Shown: in pieces, positions 2,889-62,000 of the stretch
How the letters are laid out: each line of letters opens with the position of its first letter
Position numbering within the stretch: position 1 is the first letter of the stretch
DNA from: Octopus vulgaris
Taxonomy: Eukaryota
DNA: 62,000 nt
Direction of reading: 5' to 3'
NCBI GenBank assembly: GCA_951406725.2
Contig: OX597814.1
Span: 169,156,001-169,218,000, forward strand
Notes under the pieces: model-generated
Told to the model about the DNA's origin: nothing
The model's database searches: none
Seen by the model: only the letters and a program-made list of their open reading frames with translations
Translations under genes and position numbers: made by a program

Positions 2889-3446
2889 TTGGGTTGCTCG
2901 GAAAGTTCGTGCCGATTTATAGTAGCTTACTGTTCAACTTATTTTAGAACATGGTTGATTCCATAAAATAGGATTTGACTACACCTCCATTTAGAGCACA
3001 GTTTAAGCTATCTTTTCGTGGAAGAAGGTTTATGTTCCTATAACCTGTGTTAATTCTGTAACCTTTAAAATGGAAGATAAGAAAGTTCATTTTCGGCACT
3101 TCATGCTTTGGGAACCAGACAAAAATTGCTGCAGCTTGGCTAGGATGTGTTACCCCACCCTCACCAGATATTGTTCCTTCGGATTTTCACTTATTCAGGT
3201 CTCTGCAGAATAGTCTTAATGGTAAAACTTTCAATTCCTTGGATGACATAAAAAGATACCTTGATGAATTGTTTGACATGAAACCACCTCAATTCTGGGA
3301 AGAGGGTATTTTCAAGTTAAAGGAAAGATGGAGACGCATTGTGCAACAAAATGGTTCATATTTGGTTGATTAAAAATGTAATGGTAAGTATTTATTTACC
3401 TTTTCCTTTCCTTTAAAAATTGGCATGAACTTTTCGGACAACCCAA
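2889..3446 (+). mobile_element. Non-autonomous mariner (internal deletion derivative)
   Basis: TIRs TTGGGTTG..GAAAGTTC / GAACTTTTCGGACAACCCAA, TA on both sides, transposase N- and C-terminal remnants; sister copy at 16940. Confidence 0.9.
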
Positions 3447-3620
3447 TACTACTGTGTGCTGCAAATTTCAGGCCTGGAGTGAAGTTTAGATGATTTACAG
3501 GCAGTTTTTCATGCCCATGTACAAATAGCATGGGTATTATACTTATCATGCAAAAACATAACTTTATTATAATAATTTGAATGCTTAGTTATACATTAGT
3601 TAACTTGGACAATAGATATA

Positions 3621-3818
3621 CAGTACTTAATGTCATATAAGACACATTCCCTTTTTTTTGCCAAAGAAAATCTCCGAAAACACACCCTGGTTTCTATGTG
3701 TCTAGTTGGGTCTGTATGTCATGCATTAAGGCAATAAATCTTTTTTTCCCTGAATATGCACTGCTGAAATTGAGATGCATTTAATGTATCTGTGCATCTT
3801 TTATGCCATCAAGTACAG
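3621..3818. mobile_element. Tc2/pogo-like MITE, decayed
   Basis: Imperfect ~26-bp TIRs (CAGTACTTAATGTCATATAAGACAC / GTGCATCTTTTATGCCATCAAGTACAG) flanked by TA. Confidence 0.5.
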
Positions 3819-4223
3819 TAACTTCCTTCTGGTCATGCTGTCAGAATTATGGCTACACACTTGGAACCAGGTAAACAATAGGTAACATTTAATTCTTGTG
3901 TATATGCACATGTGTAATGTACAATACACACTTCTGGAAAAAGTGACTATTGTACATGGTTATCATGTTTGGTTTCAAGTTGGCTCATGAACTCAAAACT
4001 GCAGTGAGCATTTTCATCCATCTCCCCACAATACTTATCTCATTTTACTACCTTACAATACACAGACATTCCTTCAGTTCATTCATTTATCTTCTGTCTA
4101 CTTTGTCTACGAATAACTGCTAGCATTAATTTCTTTACGTAGAAAGGAAGGAATTTCAACCATGTTTCATGGTCTGCTACCACAACAGCTCCTTTATAGG
4201 ATCTAGTTCACTCAAGACATCAT

Positions 4224-4316
4224 CCAGAGGAACCACGTCCAGTTTCGCCCCCTACTCCTCTACCGTTTTGATGTGGTGGGCCCCCGCCCCTCTTTCGGGG
4301 GTGTCTTCAGCTCTGG
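4224..4316 (-). ncRNA. Hammerhead-like motif with long loop II, stem III damaged
   Basis: CCAGAG/CTCTGG 6-bp stem I, CTGAAGA, CCCCC/GGGGG stem II, CGAAA. Confidence 0.5.
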
Positions 4317-4397
4317 TGTTGGGTGCATGTCTTCTTTCTTCTTCTTTCTTCTGTTCCCTGGCCTCTTTGATGTAGCATCAATGAGTGTCAGCGGGCG

Positions 4398-4558
4398 ACT
4401 GACTGTCTTGTCAAATTTCCCTTTAAATACCTGCTGCTAGGCTCCAGCAGGCAGCCCCAGCAAGTTGTCATGTAACAGTGTCTCAACTTTAACTGACCAA
4501 TGAAGGTGCGTAGTCTTAGCCCAGGCATTCTCTAAATGAGACCGTCACCTGTCAATCA
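4398..4558 (-). promoter_or_regulatory. Pol II core promoter-like module, probably element-borne
   Basis: TATTTAAA (4429-4422) 29 nt upstream of the A of Inr TCAGT (4400); ATTGG at 4501-4497; TGATTGACAG at 4558-4549. Confidence 0.4.
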
Positions 4559-4924
4559 GCGAAGCTAATTCAGTGTCAGCTTGTCTCACCTAGTGATGTT
4601 ATTTTCTTGCTGGTATGTTATGACTTTCAAGCCATTTTTGGTCTTCCCGCTTCAGTCACTCAATCCCTACCCTTTTACTGTACCCTTTATCTCATGTGCT
4701 CTTTCTGTTGAATTATGCCCTAAGTCTGTCTGAATTATGTTTTCATGGATGACAAACCAATCATACACTTTTAGTTATCTACCATCCATTGTTCAATCAA
4801 TTACATTGTGTAACACTATTTTTGTCCTTGAGTAGCAACTGTTATTTCCTACTTGCTTACCTCTAGAAAGTATGAAAAATTGCTAATATTTCCTTCAAAC
4901 TTTGCTTCTATTACATTTATTCAA

Positions 4925-5090
4925 ACCCCAAAGAATCCCTCTCATTGCATGGCTATGATGTTCTCTCACTATCCCTGTTCATCAGCAGAGATACACATAT
5001 TATCAGCCATTAAGGGGCATGCTGAAGTGGTTAAGGTCAAGTAACTGACAAGCAAATCTGTGGTATTGAGCAGAATATTTGCTATAACAA
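4925..5090 (-). mobile_element. Fragment of interspersed repeat family D (putative LINE 3' UTR)
   Basis: Similar to 19230-19385 and 30010-30160. Confidence 0.6.
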
Positions 5091-5112
5091 TATTTCTGCT
5101 CCATTCTGCTAT

Positions 5113-5345
5113 AAGGCGGCAAGCTGGCAGAAACATTAGCATGCCGGACGGAATGCTTAGCGGTATTTCGTCTGCCACTATGTTCTGAGTTCAAATTCTG
5201 CCAAGGTCGTCTTTGCCTTTCATCCCTTTCAGGGTCGATAAATTAAGTACTAGTTACACACTGGGGTCGATGTAATCGACTTAATCCCTTTATCTGTCCT
5301 TGTTTGTCCCCTCTATATTTAGCCCCTTGTGAGCAATAAAGAAAT
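5113..5345 (+). mobile_element. tRNA-related SINE (family B)
   Basis: GGCGGCAAGCTGGCAGAAAC head, GAGTTCAAATTC B box; more than 15 copies in the window. Confidence 0.85.
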
Positions 5346-5391
5346 AAATATTTCTGCTTCAGCAACTGAATGCTAAATCTGTCTGAAATAA

Positions 5392-5535
5392 TCATCACCA
5401 TTTAACATCTACCTTCCATGCTGGCATGGGTTGGTTGGTTTGATAGGGGCCGGCCAGGCAGAAGCTTGCACCAGACCTCTGTGTCTGTTTTAGCAACATT
5501 TTTATAGCTGGATGTATTTCCTGACACCAACCACC
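5392..5535 (-). mobile_element. Short RTE-type 3' end
   Basis: CATCACCATTTAACATC..CCATGCTGGCATGGGTTGG terminus. Confidence 0.6.
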
Positions 5536-5760
5536 CAGCACTAAATGCAATGGAAAACAGATTAGTTTCAAAGCATTGATGTCCAGGTGACAAAAGCAAA
5601 GTTTGAAGGGAATAGTAGTCATTTCCTTTGATTTCTTGATAGAAGCAAATAGGAAATAACACTTACTGATGAAAGACAAAAAAAGGAAAACTTTTATTAC
5701 ACTGTATTATATGCTCCTACCCATCTACTGATGTGGTAAGTGGTCTATGATCTTGTTTAT

Positions 5761-5808
5761 ACTATCTGATGAAGCAACATGATGTTGGGGAAACTCCAGA
5801 GTAGCTAT
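5761..5808 (+). ncRNA. Decayed hammerhead-like motif
   Basis: CTGATGA, CAACA/TGTTG stem II, GAAA, CTC/GAG stem III, GTA; stem I does not pair. Confidence 0.35.
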
Positions 5809-6834
5809 CAACTGGATAAGTCAAAGCAAAGTGTGTCTGTATGTGTGTGTATATATGTATATGCATAATCAAAGGAATGGAAAAACAGAAAAAAATTCTG
5901 CTGAAGAAAACTTAATAGTATTAACAATGACAACATTACATAGCAATGACTAAAAGGAATTTCAAAAGTCACTTTTACAACCACAGTTCATTCCTCTGAA
6001 ATGAAGAAACGAGGAACTATATATGGTAAATTAAAGACAATGAAATTAATAATTTTAATGCCTTTTGAACAATACTGAATTCACAGAAACCATGCACCAG
6101 TGATTCCAATGTGCTTCAGAGTTTTTCATTCTAAATTAACTTGTGACCTCAAATGATTACTTAAATAAGAGATCTGAATGTTCACCAAATGCAGACATAT
6201 TAAGAAATTCCTTCTGGCTATTTTTAATTGAACAATAGAATTCAATTAATTGCATAACACACTACTGTTGATTTCTGTACGTGTATTTATGGGCATGTGC
6301 CAACATAAACCTCTTATCCAACAGCCTCTTCTGCTGCCATCACACCACGTACATTACATGCTAAACAGGAATTGATTATATGCTGCCTCAGATAAAGAAT
6401 TCTTGAGTAAACACACCGTTCTAGAGAAAATCTTCATTCTGCTAAATATTGCATCAGCAGAATGCAATATTTAGCAGGAAATGTAAATTCATTCATTAAA
6501 AAAACCCCCGCTAACATCTCTCTCTTTCTCTCTCACAATCTATCTATCTACCTATCTATCTGTCGGCCTGTCTGTCTATTATTTATCATCTATCTGTCCG
6601 CCTAACGATCCCTATTGATCAATTTTTTTCCTCTCCCCCTTTTTTTTACCCCCCCCCCTTTTTTGTCCTCTTTCTCTCCCTTTATGATCCCTTTTGATCG
6701 ACCCGCCCTTTTTTATTTTTATTTTTATTTTTTATTTTTTTTACCTTCAAAAGAAAAGCTCTACCTTGTAATTTGTTCTATCTGTGTGCAGCCCTGTGTG
6801 GCTAATAAAGAAACATATCTACCTGTCTGCCTAT

Positions 6835-9199: not shown

Positions 9200-11330
9200 C
9201 AACCACTCCGAGAGTGTAGTGGGTGATTTTATGTGCCACCGACACAGGTGCCAGACGAGGCTGGCGAACGGCCACGCTCGGATGGTGTTTTTATGTGCCA
9301 CCGACACAGGTGCCAGACGAGGCTGGCGAACGGCCACGCTCGGATGGTGTTTTTATGTGCCACCGACACAGGTGCCAGACGAGGCTGGCGAACGGCCACG
9401 ATCGGATGGTGTTTCTTACGTGCCCACAGCACGGAGGCCAGTCGATGCGGTACTGGCTACGGCCACGTTCGGATGGCTTTCTTGTGTGCCACCGGCACTG
9501 GTACCACAAAGATACAAATTCCATTGATGTTCATCTATTTTGATTTGATTTGATTTGATTTTCACTTGCCTCAACAGGTCTTCACAAGTGTCACAAGAAG
9601 GAAGGAAGGTATGCACAGGTGAACTGACAACGTCCCAGGTAGGGGACCACGGGTTATGGCCTGACTAGTCTTGCCGGGTCTTCGGATGATGTTTTTATGT
9701 GCCTCCGACACAGGTGCCAGATGGATGGTGTTTGTTACGTGCCCACAGCACGGAGGCCAGTCGATGCGGTACTGTCTACGGCCACGTTCGGATGGTTTTC
9801 TTGTGTGCCACCGGCACTGGTACCACAAAGATACAAATTCCATTGATGTTCATCTATTTTGATTTGATTTGATTTCATTTGATTTGATCACTTGTCTCAA
9901 CAGGTCTTCACAAGTGTCACAAGAAGGAAGGTATGCACAGGCGGACTGACTACGTCCCAGGTAGGGGCCACGGGTTATGGCCTGACTAGTCTTGCTGGGT
10001 CTTCAGATCATGTTTTTATGTGCCTCCGACACAGGTGCCAGATGGATGGTGTTTGTTACGTGCCCACAGCACGGAGGCCAGTCGATGCGGTACTGTCTAC
10101 GGCCACGTTCGGATGGTTTTCTTGTGTTCCACCGGCCCTGGTACCACAAAGATACAAATTCCATTGATGTTCATCTATTTTGATTTGTTTTGATTTGATC
10201 ACTTGCCTCAACAGGTCTTCACAAGTGTCACAAGAAGGAAGGTATGCACAGGCGGACTGACTACGTCCCAGGTAGGGGCCACGGGTTATGGCCTGACTAG
10301 TCTTGCCGGGTCTTCAGATGGTGTTTTTACGTGCCACCGACACAGGTGCCAGATGAGGCTGGCGAACGGCCACGATCGGATGGTGTTTGTTATGAGCCCA
10401 CAGCACAGAGGCCAGTCGATGCGGTACTGTCTACGGCCACGTTCGGATGGTTTTCTTGTGTGCCACCGGCACTGGTACCACAAAGATACAAATTCCATTG
10501 ATGTTCATCTATTTTGATTTGATTTGATTTGATTTGATCACTTGCCTCAACAGGTCTTCACAAGTGTCACAAGAAGGAAGGTATGCAGGCGGACTGACTA
10601 CGTCCCAGGTAGGGGCCACGGGTTATGGCCTGACTAGTCTTGCCGGGTCTTCAGATGGTGTTTTTACGTGCCACCGACACAGGTGCCAGATGAGGCTGGC
10701 GAACGGCCACGATCGGATGGTGTTTGTTATGAGCCCACAGCACAGAGGCCAGTCGATGCGGTACTGTCTACGGCCACGTTCGGATGGTTTTCTTGTGTGC
10801 CACCGGCACTGGTACCACAAAGATACAAATTCCATTGATGTTCATCTATTTTGATTTGATTTGATTTGATTTGATCACTTGTCTCAACAGGTCTTCACAA
10901 GTGTCACAAGAAGGGAGGTATGCACAGGTGGACTGACTACGTCCCAGGTAGGGGCCACGGGTTATGGCCTGACTAGTCTTGCCGGGTCTTCGGATGGTGT
11001 CTTTATGTGCCACCGACACAGGTGCCAGATGAGGCTGGCGAACGGCCACGATCGGATGGTGTTTGCTATGTGCCCACAGCACGGAGGCCAGTCAATGCGG
11101 CACTGGCTACGGCCACGTTCGGATGGTTTTCTTGTGTGCCACCGGCACTGGTAACAAAGATACAAATTCCATTGATGATCATCTATTTTATTTTGATTTT
11201 CACTTTCACTTGCCTCAACAGGTCTTCACAAGTGTCACAAGAAGGAAGGTATGCACAGGTGGACTGACTACGTCCCAGGTAGGGGCCACGGGTTATGGCC
11301 TGACTACTCTTGCCGGGTCTTCTCATGCAC
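9200..11330 (-). repeat. Tandem array of the RTE 3' UTR: five full 319-337 bp units plus partial, and 3 x 62-bp modules
   Basis: Marker GATACAAATTCC at 9511, 9830, 10151, 10485, 10822, 11159; 62-bp period at 9234, 9296, 9358. Confidence 0.95.
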
Positions 11331-12950
11331 AGCATACTTCCATAGGTCTCGGTCTCTAGTCATTTCCTTGGTGAGACCTAAAGTTCGAAGGTCGTGCTTC
11401 ACCACCTCGTCCCAGGTTTTCCTGGGTCTACCTCTTCCACAGGTTCCCTCAACTGCTAGGGTGTAGCACTTTTGCACACAACTATCTACAGCCATTCTCG
11501 TCACATGACCATACCAGCGCAGCCGTCTCTCTTGCACACCACAATTGACGCTTCTTAGGTTCAACTTTTCTCTCAAGGTACTTACACTCTGACGATTATG
11601 AACACTGACATTACACATCCATCGGAGCATACTGGCTTCATTTCTTGCAAGCTTACGCATATCCTCAGCAGTCACGGCCCATGTTTCACTACCATGTAGC
11701 ATGGCTGTACGTACACATGCATCATACAGTCTGCCTTTTACTCTGAGCGAGAGGCCTTTTGTCACCAGCAGGGGTAAGAGCTCTCTAAACTTTGCCCAAG
11801 CTATTCTTACTCTAGCAGTTACACTTTCAGCACACCCACCCCCGCTCCTGACTTGGTCTCCTAGGTAGCGGAAGCTATCAACTACTTCTAGTTTGTCTCC
11901 CTGGAACGTGGTAGAAGTTGGTCTCTGCACATTTCCAGTGTTTATTGCTCCTGAGCATCTGCCACGGACAAAAACTATTTTCTTAGTTAGCCTTCCTTTG
12001 ACATTGCTGCACCTCTTATGTGTCCATAGCTTACACTTGGTGCACCTTATAGAGTTTCTACCTACACCTTTTTTACAGATCGAGCAGGGCCATCTACCTG
12101 AAGTCGTTTGTGATTGGTCCACCTTCCTACTTATTAGGACTTTGGTTTTGGCTAGGTTGATTCTAAGGCCCTTCGATTCTAATCCTTGTTTCCACACCTG
12201 AAACTTCTCCTCCAGTTCTGATAGTGACTCAGCAATTAGAGCAAGGTCATCAGCATAGAGGAGCTCCCAGGGGCATCCTGTCTTGAATTCCTCCGTTATT
12301 GCTTGGAGGACTATGATAAATAGGAGGGGACTGAGGACTGAACCTTGGTGGACCCCAACCTCTACCCGGAATTCTTCACTGTACTCGTTGCCAACCCTCA
12401 CCTTACTAGCAGCGTCTCTGTACATGGCTTGCACAGCTCTCACTAACCATTCATCTATCCCTAGTTTCCTCATTGACCACCAGATAAGGGATCGGGGGAC
12501 CCTGTCAAAGGCTTTCTCCAAGTCAACAAAAGCCAGGTACAAGGGCTTGTCTTTGGCTAGGTATTTCTCCTGCAGCTGTCTTACCAGGAATATAGCATCA
12601 CTAGTACTTTTCCCTGGCACGAACCCAAACTGCATATCATCTAAGCTGACACTCTCTCTAATTAGTTGGGCTATAACCCTCTCCGTAACCTTCATTACCT
12701 GATCCAGCAGCTTGATGCCTCTGTAGTTATTTGTATCTAGGGCGTCGCCTTTACCTTTGTAGCAGTTGACTATTATGCTGCTACACCAGTCATTGGGTAT
12801 GACTCCCTCGTGTATCACCTGGTTAACTATACGGGTGACTAAGCTATAGCCGACACCACCAGATATTTTGAGCATCTCTGCAGTAATTCCTGATGGGCCT
12901 GGAGCTTTCCCTGTTTTCATGCTTCTAATTGCCTTATCTACTAAGGAACT
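11304..12950 (-). CDS. Reverse transcriptase of RTE-clade LINE (no endonuclease, 5'-truncated), with Cys/His finger insert
   Basis: Motifs KAPGPSG, NYRGIKLL, QFGFVPG, FVDLEKAFDRV, GVHQGSVLSPLLF, LLYADDL, RLRWYGHV, RGRPRKTW; ORF-track upstream of 12950 is flanking microsatellite. Confidence 0.93.
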   Translation of the reverse strand, partial: SSLVDKAIRSMKTGKAPGPSGITAEMLKISGGVGYSLVTRIVNQVIHEGVIPNDWCSSIIVNCYKGKGDALDTNNYRGIKLLDQVMKVTERVIAQLIRESVSLDDMQFGFVPGKSTSDAIFLVRQLQEKYLAKDKPLYLAFVDLEKAFDRVPRSLIWWSMRKLGIDEWLVRAVQAMYRDAASKVRVGNEYSEEFRVEVGVHQGSVLSPLLFIIVLQAITEEFKTGCPWELLYADDLALIAESLSELEEKFQVWKQGLESKGLRINLAKTKVLISRKVDQSQTTSGRWPCSICKKGVGRNSIRCTKCKLWTHKRCSNVKGRLTKKIVFVRGRCSGAINTGNVQRPTSTTFQGDKLEVVDSFRYLGDQVRSGGGCAESVTARVRIAWAKFRELLPLLVTKGLSLRVKGRLYDACVRTAMLHGSETWAVTAEDMRKLARNEASMLRWMCNVSVHNRQSVSTLREKLNLRSVNCGVQERRLRWYGHVTRMAVDSCVQKCYTLAVEGTCGRGRPRKTWDEVVKHDLRTLGLTKEMTRDRDLWKYAVHEKTRQE

Positions 12951-13199
12951 GTTACACACACATACATATGTATGTAAGGATGCTGATGAGTTAATTATGA
13001 TTTTATTGAACATATTCACCATGTCAGATTCATACACTTATTGCAGCAGTCCTTCAGCTTTTCATAGCCCTGTAAAAGAACTCGGAAGTTTTGACCTTCA
13101 GCCCGACCTTTTGTGATATCCTTAAAACCCGGAGCTTTTTAGTACCTTCTCTTATATACATATATATTTTCATTATTTTTTGGTGGGGCTGATTCTCCA

Positions 13200-40718: not shown

Positions 40719-42882
40719 TATGTTTGACTTTTGCTTTATATTTGTACAAGTTGGCTCCAAGTCTCACCCAGAGACCTCAAGAGACAACAGGTTGGAAGTT
40801 CATGTTGTTGTTATGCCTAGTGTGCCATATATTTGGGGGGCAGTTTTTGGTGTTGTACTAATGAATGTCTAAAAAAATAAATAAATAAATAAATAAATAA
40901 AAATAAAAATTTTTTTTTTTTCCTTTCTCTTAAAAACCGAAAATTATGTTTGTTTTAAACCTTGAGATTACATAGAAAGTATTTTGCGTAGGATATGAGC
41001 AGTTCCCATGAGCACTATCTTTTGAATTTCTGCCATTTTTGGGTTTCCTGGTATCTGAGTTAGGTAGCTATCAGCCCCTTTTGCTATCATTCCCAGGGCA
41101 CCTATGACAACAGGTAATGTTTTAGTCTTCAGGTTCCACATTTTGCTGATTTCTATTTCAAGATCTTTATACTTGCTCAGTTTTTGGTAGGTCTTGACAC
41201 ATACGTTTATATCGATTGGGACAGTCATATCAATGAGGAGGCATGTTCTTTGTTTGAAGTCTTTCAATATGATATCTGGCCTATTTGCATCTATCTTTCT
41301 GTCAGTTTGAATGGTGAAGTTCCAGAGGAGTGAGATGTGGTCATTTTCAAGCACTGGGGGTGGTTTGTGTTCCCACCAGTTTTTTTCATGGGGCAAATCC
41401 AAGTTTTTGCAGATTACCCAGTGAATATATTGTGCAGCTCTATCGTGTCTGTTGAGATACTCTGTAGGCGCTAGAAGACTGCACTTGGAGACCACATGGT
41501 CAATGGCTTCATTTTGTTGCTGGCATACACGACACGTTGGACTACTTCTGATCTTTAATATGTTGGCCAGGTAGTTTCTTGTTGGTAGGCTTGAGCTGCT
41601 ATGATAAACCCCTCTGTTTCAGATTTTAAGCCAGAGGCCTTTAGCCATTGATGGGTCAGGGCTTTGTCAACATCTGCATTATTTGGGTATTTGCCATAGA
41701 GAGGTTTTTCTTGCCATTTATCATTCAGAATATCTAAGGCCGCAGATTTAGCACGGGTTTTCATGCGCTTAGCTTTTTCTGTGCCTGTTTCTTGTATGTC
41801 TATCTCTAATTCCGAAATTTGTTGTATTCGGAATTCACTTAGATATTCCATTGCCTATTTTGTTACTGAGTATGATGCTTTCTTGTTTTCATGTTTTGAG
41901 ACAAGTTTTAACATCCAGTCCTCAGAGTTTTTCAGGTAGGTGTCTAGGCCAATTGTAGCAATCTTCATTGTTACTGCCAGTTGAAAAGTCCACGGCCTCC
42001 CTCTTTTCTTGGCAGATAAAGTCGTTCTGTATCTGCCTTAGGGTGGTGCATTCTATGCATTGTCAACAGTTTTCGTATATTCCTGTCAAGATTACATATT
42101 TCAGTAATTGACCAGTTAACGATATTGAAACTGTAAGTCACAACTGGTATGGCCAATGCATTGATCGCTTCGATCCTGTTTCTCGCATTCAGCTCTGTCT
42201 TGAGTATTGCTCTTACTCTGCGATAACATTCTCTCCTGATCCTTTCCTTCATCTCTGAATGCCTTATTCCTTCTCCTTCAATTACCCCTAGATACTTGTA
42301 GTTCTCTGCTGGGTCTAATTCTTTTATGACATTCTGCTGGTCAAGGTTAACATTAGATGTTTCTGTAATTTTTCCTTTGATAAAGGTAGCTTTTGCACAC
42401 TTATCGAGGCCAAATTGCATTCTGATGTCATCACTGAATTGTTTGACAATCGCTAGTAAGGCCTTGAGTTGTTGGTCATTTTTTGCAAAGAGCTTTAAAT
42501 CATCCATGGAAATGAGATGATTTATATTTTTATCAAACATTTTATACCCGTACTGCGCATCATTGAGCAGTTTTGAGAGAGGTATTAAGGCTAAACAGAA
42601 GAGGAGTGGTGATAGTGAGTCACCCTGGAAAATGCCACATGAAATTTTTACATCACTAGCATTTAGAGATTCATTGTCACTGTTCAAAGTTAGTGTGGTT
42701 CTCCATGATCTCATACTTACAGACAAAAAGTTTCGCAGAGCAGGTGCTATCTTATACATTTCTAGGCATTTCTTAATCCAGCTATGTGGTAGGCTATCAA
42801 AAGCCTTTTTATAGTCTATCCAGGCTATCGATAAGTTTTTGTGTCGTTTGTAACAATCTTCTAAGATCATCTTATTGATGAG
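40575..42882 (-). mobile_element. R4/Dong-clade non-LTR retrotransposon, 5'-truncated, between (TAA)n tracts
   Basis: RT followed by zinc knuckle and restriction-like endonuclease; (TAA)n at 40575-40717 and 42883-43035. Confidence 0.9.
40968..42882 (-). pseudogene. Disrupted RT / zinc knuckle / RLE endonuclease ORF
   Basis: WIDYKKAFDS, GIFQGDSLSPLLF, HLISMDD (Y of YMDD replaced), WLKASGLKSETEG, RHD, NRPDII...LLID, KY.DL; split over three ORFs. Confidence 0.9.
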
Positions 42883-42945
42883 TATTATTATTATTATTAC
42901 TATTATTATTACTATTATTATTATTACTATTATTATTATTATTAC

Positions 42946-42999
<54 letters not shown>

Positions 43000-43620
43000 T
43001 ACTATTATTATTGTTATTGTTATTATTATCATTATTTTGTATTTCTCTCCAGTTTAGTTAAATTCCTTTCTAACCATTATCTCTTTCTCATTCACACATC
43101 AATAGATTAGTGCAACTGGTTGCTACTTTAAAGAGATTGAATGTCTGCTTGCTTGTTTTTAAGACTGGGAACATAGTTTTTTTTCTTGCCATTCTCAGAG
43201 TTGTGGCTAATGTTATTCTGGAAATTGAGGATTGCTGTCTTGGATGGTTTCTATTGCTTCCTCTTCTTGTTTTCTTGCCCAGTCTTTCTAGTTCTTCAAG
43301 GCAGAAGGCTCTGACGTGGCTCTTACTATGATGACCTGTGTATCAATGAAGCTATTTTCCCCTTCGCCATTCATCTCAACACTTTCAACAATGGCATTGT
43401 GGTCTAGGGTATCATTAGAACTTGCAAATCTATTTTGATGCCATTTAGCTCCATATCACCTGTCACCAGTCCAGCTAAAATCACCTGCTCATACAGCAAT
43501 ATAAAAATGATGACCAGCCATTGTTTTACATTATTTTCAATGTCCTCTTCTCATTACCCTTGTATTTTTCTACCCCATACACTGGAGTACAAGATAATCA
43601 GTCCTTATATTTTTTGTGTA

Positions 43621-59445: not shown

Positions 59446-59699
59446 GTCTTAACTGACCTGGTTATTACTGTTAGTTTTGTGCTGACTGTTGCACTTGGCA
59501 GTATTGATAACTCTTCAGACTTGCTGGCTGGGAGTGCATTGCATCTTTTATACTGGAGGCATATATAGACCCTAACAAGGGTCTATGTATATATAATAAT
59601 AACAATAATAATAATAATAATAATAATAATATGAGGGAATATTATTCCAAACTTACAGGGAAAAATTCAATTTAGAAATACTAAGTCAAATTTCACAAA

Positions 59700-59751
<52 letters not shown>

Positions 59752-60181: not shown

Positions 60182-60784
60182 ATCATCATCATCATCATCG
60201 TTTAACGTCCGCTTTCCATGCTAGCATGGGTTGGACGGTTCAACTGGGGTCTGGCAAGCCCAAAGGCTACACCAGGCCAGTCAGATCTGGCAGTGTTTCT
60301 ACAGCTGGTGCCCTTCCTAACGCCAACCACTCCGAGAGTGTAGTGGGTGATTTTATGTGCCACCGACACAGGTGCCAGACGAGGCTGGCAGACGGCCACA
60401 CTCGGATGGTGCTTTTTATGTGCCACCGACACAGGTTCCAGACGAGGCTGGCAGACGGCCACACTCGGATATGGTGTTTTCGGTGTTTTTCTTATGTGCC
60501 ACCGACACAGGTGCCAGACGAGGCTGGCGAGCGGCTACGATCGGATGGTGTTTGTTACGTGCCCACGGCACGGAAGCCAGTCGATGCGGTACTGGCTACG
60601 GTCCCGTTCGGATGGTTTTTCTTATGTGCCACCGGCACTGGTACCACAAGGATACAAATTCCATTGATGTTCATCTATTTGATTTGGTTTGACTTGATTC
60701 GATTTGACTTTGATTTGACTTGCCTCAACAGGTCTTCACAAGTGTGATTCGATTTGACTTTGATTTGACTTGCCTCAACAGGTC
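60180..60784 (-). mobile_element. RTE 3' UTR, single-unit sister of the 9052 element
   Basis: Same modules and GATACAAATTCCATTGATG; ~44-bp tandem duplication at the truncation point. Confidence 0.9.
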
Positions 60785-60952
60785 ATGTAAATTAGAAAAA
60801 AAAACACCTTTTATCAATTCAACAAGGAAAAAATTAAATTATACCATTTAGAAAAAATTACATTTTATAGAAAAATTAAATATAAAATAAAACATATATC
60901 AATGATTAAGTAATGTGCAAAATAATAAATGAAACGTATGTATTTGGTAGAA

Positions 60953-60980
<28 letters not shown>

Positions 60981-60990
<10 letters not shown>

Positions 60991-61270
60991 TATTAGAGAC
61001 AAAACCACTATTTTGCAAAACAAACAAGGAAAGACTTAATCAATACATAAAATTTTAATAAATAGTCAAAAAAACCGCCACTACAATTGTTTCTTGTCTT
61101 GATCGACAATCTTCAGATGGACTTCCAATAAGTCAGTTTCAAATTATGTGACTGAATTTGCAAAATAGTGGTTTTGTCTCTAATAATATTTTATAATATT
61201 TTACTATAAAATTGGATTTAATCCTAAATCTGATTTTTTCCCTGTAAATTTGGATTTATTCCCTAATATT
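60981..61270 (-). mobile_element. Miniature Penelope-type element with 39-bp perfect inverted repeat
   Basis: 60981-61019 reverse-complements 61157-61195; (TA)n on both sides; right segment resembles 59630-59700. Confidence 0.75.
61078..61120 (-). ncRNA. Minimal type I hammerhead ribozyme, fully intact
   Basis: CCAT-CTGAAGA-TTGTC-gatcaa-GACAA-GAAA-CAATTG-TA|GTGG; cleavage between 61082 and 61081. Confidence 0.85.
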
Positions 61271-61273
61271 TAT

Positions 61274-61313
<40 letters not shown>

Positions 61314-61789
61314 ATCATAAAAGTTGCTGTGAATTTCAAGCCAGCATGTTTGAAGAGTTATTAATACTGCTAAGGATGCAATAGTCAGCACAAAACTGAT
61401 AGTAACATTCAGACCAGTTATATGCCATAACCAAAAATAGACTCCTTGATGATACATACACAATAGGTTTTTTTCACTATCTCTGTCAACCAGTTTCATT
61501 CACAATGCATTAGTCAGCTCATAGCTGTAGCAGAAGATGTTTGTCAACAATGCCACACAGCAAGAATGAAACTAGAAATCACATGATTTTAAAACAAACT
61601 TCCTAATCAAACTACTGGTAAATTCCTCATCATGCCATATAGTTTGTCCCTAAATTCAGTCACATGTTTTATCTCCAGAGGAGATGCATTGCTAAACATT
61701 ATGAGAGCACATTCAAAATGAGATAATTTGAGAATGGTACAGAGTAAATGATGTAAAATAAAAAGTAAAGTTTCCTTGAGTCATACTGA

Positions 61790-62000
61790 CTTATAATGGC
61801 CAGTTTCCTGGTTACTATGGATAATATATTCTCCATCTGGATGAGACACTAATTCATTGTAGGATTACTCATTTTTACCAGCTGAGTGAAATGAAGTGTT
61901 TTGCTCAAGAACACAATGTGTCATCCGGTCCAGGAATTGAAACCACAATCTTATGATCATAAGTCCAACACCCGAACCACTAAGCCACATGCCTACCCGA
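61790..62000 (-). mobile_element. tRNA-derived SINE (family F-like), cut by window end
   Basis: Minus strand TGGCTTAGTGG and GGTTTCAATTCC boxes, core-like CACTCAGCTGG. Confidence 0.6.

What the first reader, a model, noticed from the sequence alone, without database searches (positions are those of the whole stretch)
60981..61270. 290-bp element consisting of an intact hammerhead and a perfect 39-bp inverted repeat
All core nucleotides and three stems are present, with the palindrome ACAATTGT suited to dimer cleavage. The perfect inverted repeat implies recent origin. The element sits between (TA)n tracts and related ends occur at 59630-59700 and ~51660. It is the best candidate for an active, ORF-less ribozyme retroelement here.
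Basis: partly seen in the sequence, partly recalled or inferred. Interest (0 to 1): 0.75.

Follow-up and report, generated by a model that had tools for sequence, protein, structure and literature searches.

The report
Penelope-like retroelement stub with hammerhead
The 290-bp element is a short, dead-end insertion left by a young Penelope-like retrotransposon of a probable octopus genome, and its hammerhead-like motif is most likely that transposon's own unusual ribozyme, so this is a known kind of element rather than a new ORF-less ribozyme retroelement.

Summary
There is a perfect 39-bp inverted repeat, a motif with every hammerhead core nucleotide on the minus strand, and (TA)n tracts on both sides.

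The element is not a free-standing ORF-less retrozyme or a MITE. It is one insertion of a Penelope-like element (PLE).
- Full copies elsewhere in the genome carry an 840-aa ORF. Its predicted fold is a telomerase-like reverse transcriptase plus a GIY-YIG endonuclease.
- The ORF sits between 3.1-kb direct pseudo-LTRs, each holding the hammerhead motif on the ORF strand.
- The pseudo-LTR holds a 1.83-kb GT..AG intron. Its acceptor lies 13 nt upstream of the hammerhead core.

The window copy carries the exact spliced junction, which shows it passed through RNA. It consists of two head-to-head 5'-truncated cDNA copies (168 nt and 39 nt) plus an 83-bp tail, set in a (TA)n microsatellite. All of these are published PLE hallmarks.

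The hammerhead sits where PLE hammerheads sit, but it has U-A instead of G-C at positions 10.1-11.1, gets no Rfam score and shows no covariation. Retrocopies show no excess of ends at the predicted cut site. I consider the motif probably genuine, its activity unproven, and this copy inert.

The parts
60957..60980 (.). (TA)n microsatellite on the left side, the inferred insertion target
   Evidence: TRF reports 60957-60984. Every copy examined lies inside A/T-only tracts on both sides, 5-104 nt on the left and 8-97 nt on the right, with no target-site duplication outside them.
60981..61129 (-). Inverted cDNA copy, exon-2 part. It equals the last ~150 nt of the PLE unit (the 'arm', the 3' end of the pseudo-LTR).
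   Evidence: Unit positions 6158-6311 of the full element align to window 61129..60976 at 98.7% identity. The same arm lies at the end of both pseudo-LTRs of the full copy.
61078..61120 (-). Hammerhead-like motif, type I: helix I CCAU/GUGG, CUGAAGA, helix II UUGUC/GACAA, GAAA, palindrome ACAAUUGU, A17. The predicted cut lies between 61082 and 61081.
   Evidence: The family consensus has C where this copy has U (window 61117, helix I position 2.1). The 43-nt consensus occurs 492 times exactly in the genome. It is the only CUGANGA core on either strand of the 6.3-kb unit.
61130..61148 (-). 19 nt derived from exon 1 of the pseudo-LTR transcript. The exon-exon junction lies between 61130 and 61129.
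   Evidence: In full copies this sequence is followed by GTAAGT, then 1828 nt, then TTTTAG, then the arm. The exact spliced junction occurs 319 times in the genome, including window 61140..61119.
61149..61156 (.). 8-nt junction filler between the two head-to-head copies; origin not resolved
   Evidence: Read directly from the sequence. It matches neither exon 1 nor the arm in register.
61157..61195 (+). Direct cDNA copy, 5'-truncated to the last 39 nt of the arm. It is the partner of 60981-61019 in the perfect inverted repeat.
   Evidence: In other copies either arm can be the short one, with different inner end points.
61196..61278 (+). One-sided 83-bp 'tail'. It equals the first ~83 nt that follow the pseudo-LTR in full copies, upstream of the ORF start.
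   Evidence: The tail is conserved at 95-99% on the same side in all 26 copies aligned. In full copies it is contiguous with the arm and lies 45 nt upstream of the ATG.
61279..61311 (.). (TA)n microsatellite on the right side
   Evidence: TRF reports 61266-61311. Unique sequence begins at about 61320 according to read contigs.

Best explanation
Window 60981-61278 is a short insertion made by a young Penelope-like retrotransposon (PLE) of a cephalopod, probably octopod, genome.

Shown:
1. The full element is about 6.3 kb per unit. In order it holds an 83-nt leader (the 'tail'), an 840-aa ORF, a 3' UTR, and a terminal ~150-nt 'arm' that carries the hammerhead motif on the ORF strand.
2. The ORF folds as a telomerase-like reverse transcriptase followed by a GIY-YIG endonuclease.
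3. Full copies have 3.1-kb direct pseudo-LTRs and sit in (TA)n tracts.
4. The pseudo-LTR holds a GT..AG interval of 1828 nt. It is precisely absent from the window copy and from hundreds of other short copies, so those passed through spliced RNA.
5. Each insertion consists of two head-to-head copies that share the element's 3' end and are cut short independently at their 5' ends. Only one side carries the tail.

Inferred, from the published in vitro behaviour of a PLE protein:
1. The endonuclease cuts both strands of an AT-rich target, and both 3' ends prime cDNA.
2. Reverse transcription starts at two internal sites of the RNA. Here these are the arm end and the tail end, which would explain a one-sided tail.
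3. Both start sites lie close to the 5' end of the spliced mRNA. Copying an ordinary mRNA to its cap therefore yields only about 170 nt (about 19 nt of exon 1 plus the arm).
4. In the window, one copy is such a complete leader copy (168 nt, minus sense). The other stopped after 39 nt, which gives the 39-bp perfect inverted repeat.

The hammerhead-like motif is the PLE's own pseudo-LTR hammerhead. It is a minimal type-I variant with a palindromic helix III that would pair between two copies. The window copy is a dead end, not a source element.
For: Family and anatomy:
- At least 1266 first-look candidates for the element; 492 exact copies of the 43-nt motif; 319 exact spliced junctions.
- All aligned copies share (TA)n on both sides and the same one-sided tail.
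- Long versions (L053-L059, L062) are two unspliced copies joined head to head and truncated at different unit positions, for example 958 vs 2860 nt and 4569 vs 2621 nt.

Full copy on contig C4:
- The direct repeat 3134-6275 equals 9464-12586 at 98.4% identity.
- Hammerhead motifs lie on the plus strand 6310 nt apart, on the ORF strand.
- (TA)n tracts lie at both ends.

Intron:
- Exon 1 ends CTT|GTAAGT and the arm starts after TTTTAG|.
- A ladder of 5' truncations appears among ORF copies, many with open frames of about 840 aa at 97-99% identity.

Protein:
- The AlphaFold model has mean pLDDT 80.6.
- The best Foldseek hits are telomerase reverse transcriptases, with E down to 5.5e-10.
- VIA-align gives Z 16 to reverse transcriptases. 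Model residues 708-820 match the I-TevI GIY-YIG catalytic domain at Z 10.3, rmsd 2.5 over 90 of 92 residues.
- Y712, Y733, G735, R744, H748, E803, N817 and two cysteine clusters are invariant among 16 homologues.
- hhalign places RT motifs A, B and C in register with a Pfam-confirmed RT from the window.

Literature:
- PLE insertions are 5'-truncated, form pseudo-LTRs, often carry an adjacent inverted 5'-truncated copy and a one-sided tail, and favour (TA)n (PMC8557442).
- A PLE protein cuts and extends both strands. It starts reverse transcription at two internal sites, and the tail is the sequence between them (PMC11167929).
- PLE hammerheads lie in pseudo-LTRs, have a short helix I and a palindromic helix III, and in D. 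virilis the intron ends at the 5' end of helix I (PMC4209133).

Chance: the descriptor's chance rate of about 0.002 per 124 kb searched implies roughly 5e-5 for one strand of a 3-kb pseudo-LTR.
Against: Against the hammerhead being functional:
- No Rfam hammerhead model scores the motif at gathering threshold, at E<=10 on 601 nt or 73 nt around the window motif, or at E<=10 over 4.3 kb spanning the 3' pseudo-LTR of the full copy. Canonical type-I hammerheads elsewhere in this genome score 34-45 bits.
- Positions 10.1-11.1 are U-A. PLE hammerheads are reported to keep G-C there (PMC4209133). All but one of the other hammerhead-like motifs found incidentally in held sequence have G-C.
- No covariation could be tested, because the copies are nearly identical.
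- The isolated motif does not fold as a hammerhead by MFE (z-score 0.12). In the 174-nt leader the hammerhead fold is 4.4 kcal/mol above the MFE.
- Retrocopies show no excess of 5' ends at the predicted cut site: 6 copies break there against 5 at the neighbouring position.
- A sister family with the same build has no CUGANGA core in its arms.

Against other parts of the explanation:
- Pfam finds neither RVT_1 nor GIY-YIG in the ORF.
- The tail is 83 bp, against 30-40 bp in the literature.
- No run on record as RNA holds the element, so transcription and splicing are inferred from DNA alone.
Confidence: 0.82

Rival explanations
1. The hammerhead-like string is a chance or decayed motif with no catalytic role. 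The PLE reading of the element stands, but this family, like the Naiad and Chlamys PLE clades, has no working hammerhead.
For: - No Rfam score.
- U-A at positions 10.1-11.1.
- The MFE fold is not the hammerhead.
- No excess of retrocopy ends at the predicted cut site.
- The sister family lacks the core.
- Some PLE clades are reported to lack canonical hammerheads (PMC8557442).
Against: - It is the only CUGANGA core in the 6.3-kb unit. It lies on the sense strand, in the pseudo-LTR, 13 nt after the splice acceptor. That is where PLE hammerheads lie (PMC4209133).
- The chance rate for the full descriptor is about 0.002 per window, and no shuffle produced an 8-nt palindromic helix III.
- The change from G-C to U-A keeps the base pair.
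Confidence: 0.18
2. The ~330-bp palindrome plus tail is a separate non-autonomous lineage, retrozyme-like or SINE-like. It would be copied as a unit from its own master copies and mobilised in trans by the PLE protein, rather than made afresh from PLE mRNA leaders at each event.
For: - Hundreds of copies have very similar centres. Most spacings between the two spliced junctions are 28-30 nt.
- Animal retrozymes have been proposed to derive from PLE pseudo-LTRs (preprint 10.64898/2026.07.22.740005).
Against: - Short copies are as similar to the pseudo-LTRs of ORF-bearing copies (98-99%) as those copies are to each other.
- Centres vary: junction spacings of 23, 27-32, 36, 39, 42, 50, 51 and 95 nt occur, and both loop orientations are seen 4:3.
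- Either arm can be the truncated one.
- Short copies hold none of the sequence upstream of the inferred start site.
- Copies are dispersed inverted pairs, not direct tandem arrays. Among the 30 loci, only L029 holds a second, partial element beside the main one, and none holds a direct tandem array. Same-strand neighbours do occur elsewhere, in L060 and L061.
Confidence: 0.1
3. A foldback or MITE-type DNA transposon that targets (TA)n microsatellites, like rice Micron and the plant SaTar elements. The long inverted repeats would be its terminal repeats.
For: - Near-perfect palindromes of about 327 bp sit in (TA)n tracts with no visible target duplication.
- Plant SaTar elements of 380-500 bp with 50-250-bp terminal repeats behave this way (PMC5907723).
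- This was my own reading up.
Against: - The short form lacks exactly a GT..AG interval present in the long form, and this junction occurs 319 times.
- The arms are the 3' end of an RT/GIY-YIG element and occur as direct repeats around its ORF.
- The arms show independent 5' truncation ladders.
- The tail is one-sided, which terminal repeats do not explain.
Confidence: 0.03

Closest known systems
Endonuclease-positive Penelope-like elements with a C-terminal GIY-YIG domain (Penelope/Poseidon, Neptune, Nematis, Hydra clades; Arkhipova and colleagues, PMC8557442)
   Same: - Telomerase-like RT fused to a GIY-YIG endonuclease, with a cysteine motif upstream of it.
- Pseudo-LTRs formed by partial tandems.
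- An inverted 5'-truncated copy next to the insertion, and a one-sided tail.
- Insertion into (TA)n or AT-rich DNA.
- An intron in the pseudo-LTR.
- A hammerhead motif in the pseudo-LTR on the sense strand.
   Different: - The clade was not determined.
- Pfam RVT_1 and GIY-YIG models do not score the ORF. Its homologues carry only PF26215 and PF28514.
- The ORF has an asparagine-rich linker of about 110 aa.
- The tail is 83 bp, not 30-40 bp.
- The intron is 1.83 kb (75 bp in D. virilis Penelope).
- The pseudo-LTR is 3.1 kb.
Minimal hammerheads of PLEs (Cervera and de la Pena 2014, PMC4209133), including the D. virilis Penelope variant
   Same: - Type I topology, with a helix I of 4 bp.
- A 2-bp helix III with a palindromic loop, which forms an 8-nt palindrome usable in a dimer.
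- Location in the pseudo-LTR.
- The intron acceptor maps next to the 5' side of helix I, as described for D. virilis.
   Different: - Positions 10.1-11.1 are U-A, not the highly conserved G-C.
- Helix II is 5 bp, not 7-8 bp.
- There is no unpaired nucleotide after A9.
- No covariation is available.
- The motif falls below the detection limit of every Rfam hammerhead model.
Poseidon element PAc of Anolis carolinensis, studied in vitro (Frangieh et al. 2024, PMC11167929)
   Same: The in vitro behaviour predicts this insertion's build:
- both target strands are cut and extended;
- the target is AT-rich;
- reverse transcription starts at two internal sites, with the tail as the sequence between them;
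- 5' truncation shortens the product.
   Different: - In PAc the start sites lie 111-118 nt inside the ORF, and the hammerhead overlaps the start codon.
- Here both inferred start sites lie upstream of the ATG (128 and 45 nt), and the hammerhead lies about 230 nt upstream.
- Nothing here was tested biochemically.
Metazoan non-LTR retrozymes (Cervera and de la Pena 2020, PMC7229834; proposed PLE origin in preprint 10.64898/2026.07.22.740005)
   Same: Short ORF-less AT-rich repeats that carry a type-I hammerhead with a short helix III and are probably dependent on PLE machinery.
   Different: - Retrozymes are direct tandem arrays of 150-450-bp monomers. Two hammerheads on one strand release a unit that circularises.
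- These copies are dispersed inverted pairs. They have one sense hammerhead per strand, or one in total as in the window.
- Cleavage here therefore cannot release a unit-length RNA.
Microsatellite-targeted class II elements of plants (rice Micron / SaTar, PMC5907723)
   Same: Small ORF-less elements with very long inverted repeats, set in (TA)n tracts without a target duplication.
   Different: Those are Mutator-derived DNA elements. Here a spliced junction and an RT/GIY-YIG parent show an RNA route.

Membership tests
Penelope-like element (EN+) | Reverse transcriptase of the telomerase-related type | tested here: met
   The model of the 840-aa ORF has mean pLDDT 80.6. The best Foldseek PDB hits are TERTs (6zdq at 5.5e-10, also 3du5, 6usr, 7lma). 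VIA-align gives Z 16.0 to DGR RT and TERT over residues 1-498. hhalign puts motifs A, B and C in register with an RVT_1 protein. The Pfam RVT_1 model itself does not score the ORF.
Penelope-like element (EN+) | GIY-YIG endonuclease fused to the RT | tested here: met
   Model residues 708-820 match the I-TevI catalytic domain (1ln0_A) at Z 10.3, rmsd 2.5 over 90 of 92 residues. Y712, Y733, G735, R744, H748, E803 and N817 are invariant, as are the cysteines C691/C693/C699/C705 and the residues C797/C800/C826/H828. The Pfam GIY-YIG model gives no hit. A single-sequence fold of the domain alone failed, with pLDDT 32.
Penelope-like element (EN+) | Pseudo-LTRs: direct repeats made by a 5'-truncated tandem copy | tested here: met
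   In the C4 copy, positions 3134-6275 equal 9464-12586 at 98.4% identity over 3.14 kb and flank the ORF.
Penelope-like element (EN+) | Adjacent inverted 5'-truncated copy, giving inverted repeats | tested here: met
   The window copy has arms of 168 nt and 39 nt. In the 26 aligned short copies either arm can be truncated. Eight long copies have arms that end at different unit positions.
Penelope-like element (EN+) | [quoted passage not shown] | tested here: met
   An 83-bp tail lies on one side in all copies. It equals the sequence that follows the pseudo-LTR in full copies. It is longer than the published 30-40 bp.
Penelope-like element (EN+) | Insertion bias for microsatellites or AT-rich DNA, with the target duplication obscured | tested here: met
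   All 26 copies lie within A/T-only tracts on both sides, and no duplication lies outside them. The full copy is also bounded by (TA)n.
Penelope-like element (EN+) | Spliceosomal intron in the pseudo-LTR / 5' UTR, retained or removed in copies | tested here: met
   An interval of 1828 nt with GTAAGT..TTTTAG borders is present in long copies and precisely absent in short ones. The exact junction occurs 319 times. No RNA reads were available to show the splicing directly.
Hammerhead ribozyme, type I (Rfam RF00163) | Core nucleotides C3-A9 (CUGANGA), G12-A14, the A15.1-U16.1 pair, and a non-G at position 17 | tested here: met
   CUGAAGA, GAA, A..U and A17 are all present, read from the minus strand 61116..61082.
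Hammerhead ribozyme, type I (Rfam RF00163) | Three helices around the core | tested here: met
   Helix I has 4 bp (G-U at positions 1.1-2.1 in the window, G-C in the family consensus). Helix II has 5 bp. Helix III has 2 bp plus a tetraloop, or 8 bp between two copies. Thermodynamics do not favour this fold in a monomer.
Hammerhead ribozyme, type I (Rfam RF00163) | Conserved G10.1-C11.1 pair | tested here: not met
   The pair is U-A in all family copies. G-C is described as highly conserved in PLE hammerheads (PMC4209133).
Hammerhead ribozyme, type I (Rfam RF00163) | Covariance-model score at or above the gathering threshold | tested here: not met
   No hammerhead family is listed at gathering threshold, at E<=10 on 601 nt or 73 nt around the window motif, or at E<=10 over 4.3 kb spanning the 3' pseudo-LTR of the full copy. 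Eight other sites in the genome pass the 34-bit threshold.
Hammerhead ribozyme, type I (Rfam RF00163) | Helices supported by compensatory changes | tested here: inconclusive
   Copies are near-identical. The only frequent variants in the motif are in loop 3 (61088) and at position 2.1 (61117).
Hammerhead ribozyme, type I (Rfam RF00163) | Site-specific self-cleavage | not testable with these tools
   There is only an indirect test. Genomic retrocopies show no excess of 5' ends at the predicted site, 6 against 5 at the control position.
Metazoan non-LTR retrozyme | Direct tandem repeats of 150-450 bp, each with a hammerhead on the same strand | tested here: not met
   Copies are dispersed inverted pairs. 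None of the 30 loci holds a direct tandem array. Exact motifs occur mostly as convergent pairs about 100 nt apart, although same-strand neighbours exist at L060 and L061.
MITE / foldback DNA transposon (including the Micron/SaTar type) | DNA-mediated mobility with terminal inverted repeats as transposase substrates | tested here: not met
   The spliced junction and the RT-bearing parent show an RNA route. The inverted repeats are unequal 5'-truncated copies.

The most novel reading that the evidence does not exclude
In this octopod PLE the two inferred reverse-transcription start sites lie within about 260 nt of the cap of the spliced mRNA. The commonest retrotransposition product would then be a ~170-nt copy of the spliced leader, not the element itself.

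This would have seeded hundreds of hairpin-forming palindromes in (TA)n tracts, and those copies would record the transcription start site and the splice junction in DNA.

The hammerhead variant (U-A at positions 10.1-11.1) begins 9 nt after the splice acceptor. Splicing, which replaces the intron with exon 1 just upstream of helix I, could therefore decide whether the ribozyme folds. That would be a splicing-gated hammerhead shared between Drosophila Penelope and a cephalopod.
Probability: 0.2. Interest if true: 0.6.

Novelty: new member of a known kind. Interest (0 to 1): 0.4.

Why it matters
Penelope-like elements are the least understood class of eukaryotic retrotransposons. What their hammerheads do and how their odd insertions form are both open questions.

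This family offers a clean natural data set:
- many near-identical ORF-bearing copies;
- hundreds of short copies that record, in DNA, the inferred mRNA start, a 1.83-kb splice, both inferred reverse-transcription start sites, and the head-to-head joining of two cDNAs;
- a hammerhead that departs from the conserved G10.1-C11.1 pair.

It could be used to test whether PLE hammerheads cleave in vivo, and whether splicing and cleavage are linked.

The short copies are also a warning for annotation. They look like (TA)n-targeted foldback MITEs and would be misfiled as DNA transposons.

None of this changes the known picture of PLEs. It adds a well-resolved cephalopod example.

Tried and rejected
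1. MITE / foldback DNA transposon. This was my working reading up, based on the palindromes, the (TA)n flanks, the absence of a target duplication, and the analogy with Micron/SaTar. I dropped it once the long copies, the ORF and the spliced junction appeared.

2. Central deletions of an unstable palindrome, as the reason for unequal arms. Independent 5' truncation of two cDNA copies replaces this, because the long unspliced copies show the same asymmetry.

3. Helitron-like ends. There is a CTAA|T and a small hairpin in the tail, but no 5' TC end, and the sister family ends differently.

4. Rfam, at gathering threshold and at permissive E-values on 601 nt and 73 nt around the window motif and over 4.3 kb spanning the 3' pseudo-LTR of the full copy. 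No hammerhead family was listed.

5. Reads.
- No listed run is on record as RNA, and all are kept as contigs.
- Read laying on window 60300-61800 (1501 letters, four organism labels) showed only that 60300-61268 is highly repeated, gave two frequent variants, and showed that contigs break at the (TA)n tracts.
- It gave no empty site, no start or end information, and no circular joints that could be interpreted.

6. Footprint of in vivo cleavage. Arms that begin exactly at G1.1 were not enriched: 6 against 5 at a control position.

7. Pfam on the ORF and on homologues gave no RT or GIY-YIG hit. A profile search of PDB sequences found nothing. A single-sequence fold of the endonuclease domain was useless, with pLDDT 32.

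9. The search of earlier findings failed on all four tries. The Lunse et al. 2017 paper is not held.
Full report
**What is at the coordinates**

Window 60981-61019 and 61157-61195 form a perfect 39-bp inverted repeat, 137 nt apart. On the minus strand, 61120..61078 reads as a type-I hammerhead:
- helix I CCAU/GUGG
- the core CUGAAGA
- helix II UUGUC/GACAA, closed by the loop GAUCAA
- GAAA, then the palindrome ACAAUUGU

(TA)n tracts lie at 60957-60984 and 61266-61311.

A defined descriptor finds only this site in the window. It requires CUGANGA, a helix II of at least 4 bp, GAAA, a helix III of at least 2 bp, UH, and a helix I of at least 4 bp. The descriptor found 4 sites in 2262 dinucleotide-preserving shuffles, about 0.002 per window. 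None of those had an 8-nt palindromic helix III.

Against it, no Rfam hammerhead model lists the site at gathering threshold or at E<=10, even when only 73 nt are searched. The isolated motif also folds no better than shuffles and does not fold as a hammerhead.

**A multicopy family that first looked like a foldback MITE**

The 215-bp core has at least 1266 first-look candidates in a 2.8-Gb genome of 227 contigs. The commonest form is a near-perfect palindrome of about 327 bp. Its arms correspond to positions 1-178 of the window copy.

Every copy has (TA)n on both sides and the same ~83-bp extension on one side only. No target duplication lies outside the A/T tracts.

In the short forms, either arm can be the short one, and the inner end points differ between copies.

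A sister family has the same build: a (TA)n tract, a palindrome, a tail, then a microsatellite. It includes window 59585-59707 (a solo tail) and 60788-60946 (a half arm). The outer ~70 nt of its arms are homologous to this family, but it has no CUGANGA core.

At this stage the best analogy was the (TA)n-targeted, long-repeat class II elements of plants, Micron and SaTar (PMC5907723).

**The turn: long copies, an ORF and pseudo-LTRs**

The 43-nt family consensus of the motif occurs 492 times exactly in the genome. Most occurrences are convergent pairs about 100 nt apart. Some pairs lie 0.5-9 kb apart.

Fetching those wider pairs showed the same outer arms and tail, but with the arms extending inward for 0.06-4.6 kb. 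Mapped on a full unit, the two arms of each insertion stop at different positions, for example 958 vs 2860 nt and 4569 vs 2621 nt. They are two independently 5'-truncated copies joined head to head.

One arm of L058 reaches into an open frame. Searching the genome with that frame found many copies at 97-99% identity with open frames of about 840 aa, plus a ladder of 5' truncations.

A full copy on contig C4 has this order:
1. (TA)n
2. a 3.14-kb repeat
3. the 83-nt 'tail'
4. 45 nt
5. ATG and the 840-aa ORF
6. the 3' UTR
7. the same 3.14-kb repeat (98.4% identical)
8. (TA)n

The hammerhead motif lies near the end of each repeat, on the ORF strand, and the two motifs are 6310 nt apart. It is the only CUGANGA core on either strand of the 6.3-kb unit.

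**What the ORF is**

Pfam does not score it. Word-based homology search finds proteins of about 700 aa that carry only PF26215 and PF28514. They include proteins of Argonauta hians and one of Octopus bimaculoides. Together with the genome size, the 31 or more large contigs and about 36% GC, this suggests an octopod. That is an inference.

An AlphaFold model built on 16 homologues has mean pLDDT 80.6.
- Its best Foldseek matches are telomerase reverse transcriptases (E down to 5.5e-10). DRT, retron, LINE-1 and R2 reverse transcriptases follow.
- VIA-align gives Z 16 to reverse transcriptases over residues 1-498.
- VIA-align also matches residues 708-820 to the GIY-YIG catalytic domain of I-TevI, at Z 10.3, rmsd 2.5 over 90 of 92 residues.
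- The usual GIY-YIG residues and two cysteine clusters are invariant among the homologues.
- hhalign puts RT motifs A, B and C in register with a Pfam-confirmed RT from the window.

A telomerase-like RT fused to a C-terminal GIY-YIG endonuclease is the defining architecture of endonuclease-positive Penelope-like elements.

**Proof of an RNA route**

In full and long copies, the sequence just inside the arm is ...TTTTAG|ATTGGAAG. In the short copies it is ...GAAACTGACTT|ATTGGAAG.

The full unit holds GAAACTGACTT 1.83 kb upstream of the arm, followed by GTAAGT. The short form therefore lacks exactly a GT..AG interval of 1828 nt.

The exact spliced junction occurs 319 times in the genome, including window 61140..61119 on the minus strand. 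The exon-1 part retained in short copies is 11-23 nt, which suggests a start site about 20 nt upstream of the donor. That is an inference.

Spacings between the two junctions of a palindrome vary. Values of 23, 27-32, 36, 39, 42, 50, 51 and 95 nt occur, and both loop orientations are seen 4:3. This argues for many independent joining events.

One copy (L063) joins a different, unrelated sequence at exactly the acceptor position, as expected if another upstream exon was spliced on.

**How the insertion formed (inferred from the literature)**

Published descriptions of PLE insertions list these features (PMC8557442):
- strong 5' truncation
- pseudo-LTRs from partial tandems
- an adjacent inverted 5'-truncated copy that creates inverted repeats
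- a short tail at one end only
- a bias for (TA)n that hides target duplications

In vitro, a PLE protein cuts and extends both DNA strands at AT-rich sites. It starts reverse transcription at two internal RNA sites, and the tail is the sequence between them (PMC11167929).

Applied here, the two start sites would be the arm end and the tail end, 128 and 45 nt upstream of the ATG. Both lie near the 5' end of the spliced mRNA. Copying an ordinary mRNA to its cap would therefore yield only about 170 nt.

The window insertion then reads as follows:
- a complete minus-sense leader copy, 60981-61148 (149 nt of arm plus 19 nt of exon 1)
- 8 nt of filler, 61149-61156
- a plus-sense copy that stopped after 39 nt, 61157-61195
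- the tail, 61196-61278

This matches the alignment of the full unit to the window. The 39-bp perfect repeat is simply the overlap of the two copies.

**The hammerhead**

Points in its favour:
- PLE hammerheads lie in pseudo-LTRs on the sense strand. They have a short helix I and a tiny palindromic helix III, are thought to act as dimers, and cleave poorly in vitro (PMC4209133; PMC6765202).
- In D. virilis Penelope the intron ends at the 5' end of helix I. Here the acceptor lies 13 nt upstream of the core and 9 nt upstream of helix I.
- The chance rate of the descriptor implies roughly 5e-5 for one strand of a 3-kb pseudo-LTR. Hammerheads, by contrast, are expected in such elements.
- The genome holds canonical PLE-type hammerheads. 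Eight pass the Rfam threshold. Several sit 40-45 nt from a (TA)n-abutting end, and one of those has an inverted copy beside it.

Points against it:
- Positions 10.1-11.1 are U-A, where G-C is described as highly conserved. All but one of the other motifs found in held sequence have G-C there.
- No covariance-model score.
- The copies are too similar for covariation. The only frequent variants are in loop 3 and at position 2.1.
- The hammerhead fold is 4.4 kcal/mol above the MFE in the 174-nt leader.
- Retrocopies show no excess of 5' ends at the predicted cut site, 6 against 5 at a control position. Template RNAs were therefore mostly uncut.

I put the odds that this is the element's evolved hammerhead at about 0.8. 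Detectable self-cleavage is less certain. The window copy has G-U at positions 1.1-2.1 and no partner copy on the same strand.

**Verdict**

The object, however, is a by-product stub of an ORF-bearing Penelope-like element. It is not an active ORF-less ribozyme retroelement, and it fails the retrozyme definition of direct tandem monomers.

It is a new member of a known kind. Its unusual details are a 1.83-kb pseudo-LTR intron, hundreds of spliced-leader retrocopies, an 83-bp tail, and a U-A variant hammerhead.

**Limits of this work**
- No RNA data were available.
- Diverged subfamilies could not be fetched.
- The PLE clade was not assigned.
- The earlier-findings tool never opened.

Noticed in passing
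window 60788-60946: A half-palindrome arm of a sister family ('B'). Its outer ~70 nt are homologous to the arm studied here, and it lies directly left of the (TA)n tract. Two PLE-type stubs therefore sit back to back, joined by a microsatellite. Read contigs show (TA)n directly before 60788 in other copies.
   Followed up: partly
window 59585-59707: A solo 'tail' of the sister family on the minus strand (about 75% identical to 61192-61315), lying between an (ATA)n and a (TA)n tract. The genome holds at least 40 copies at 90-100% identity. Most of the 12 copies fetched as loci follow a ~280-bp palindrome that has no hammerhead core.
   Followed up: yes
window 60300-60785: A very highly repeated stretch in contigs of all four organism labels. 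It includes a 63-bp unit repeated 1.9 times (60351-60470) and an exact 35-nt repeat at 50-bp spacing (60700-60784). About 300 bp of it recur near two other copies of the element (L018, L019) at a different distance. The family was not identified.
   Followed up: no
window 11304-13037 (-) and 41971-43032 (-): Two reverse-transcriptase ORFs of a different kind. The first is 577 aa and scores RVT_1 at 6e-33, with a PHD-like finger. The second is 353 aa and scores RVT_1 at 1.5e-18. They are probably LINE-type elements unrelated to the finding.
   Followed up: partly
G000, e.g. L031-L040 (C5:6546758, C9:40298314, C13:76097724 and others): The genome holds canonical type-I hammerheads; eight pass the Rfam threshold. 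Several have the PLE build: GUAC-CUGAUGA-GACC..GGUC-GAAAC-AUGU-GUC-GUAC, 40-45 nt from an end that abuts (TA)n. L038 also has an inverted copy of the hammerhead just upstream.
   Followed up: partly
G000, 63 places listed (e.g. C27:15433926-15436037): A second, very uniform family of the same protein type. At least 60 copies have open frames of about 727 aa, all about 44% identical to a metagenomic homologue.
   Followed up: no
L063 (G000:C2:52884600-52886100), inner 376 bp: A copy in which an unrelated sequence, palindromic at least at its ends, joins both arms exactly at the splice-acceptor position. It may come from a transcript in which a foreign upstream exon was spliced onto the element's acceptor.
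   Followed up: no
G000:C6:116842844-116842899: The one case seen of a head-to-head pair whose arms both begin at the predicted hammerhead cut site, with 4 nt between them. It could be a retrocopy of a cleaved RNA. It could not be fetched.
   Followed up: no
L060 (G000:C1:21587400-21589000) and L061 (G000:C1:40386300-40387800): Neighbouring insertions of the family that place two hammerhead motifs on the same strand, 439 and 323 nt apart. This is the only arrangement seen that could in principle release a unit-length RNA.
   Followed up: no
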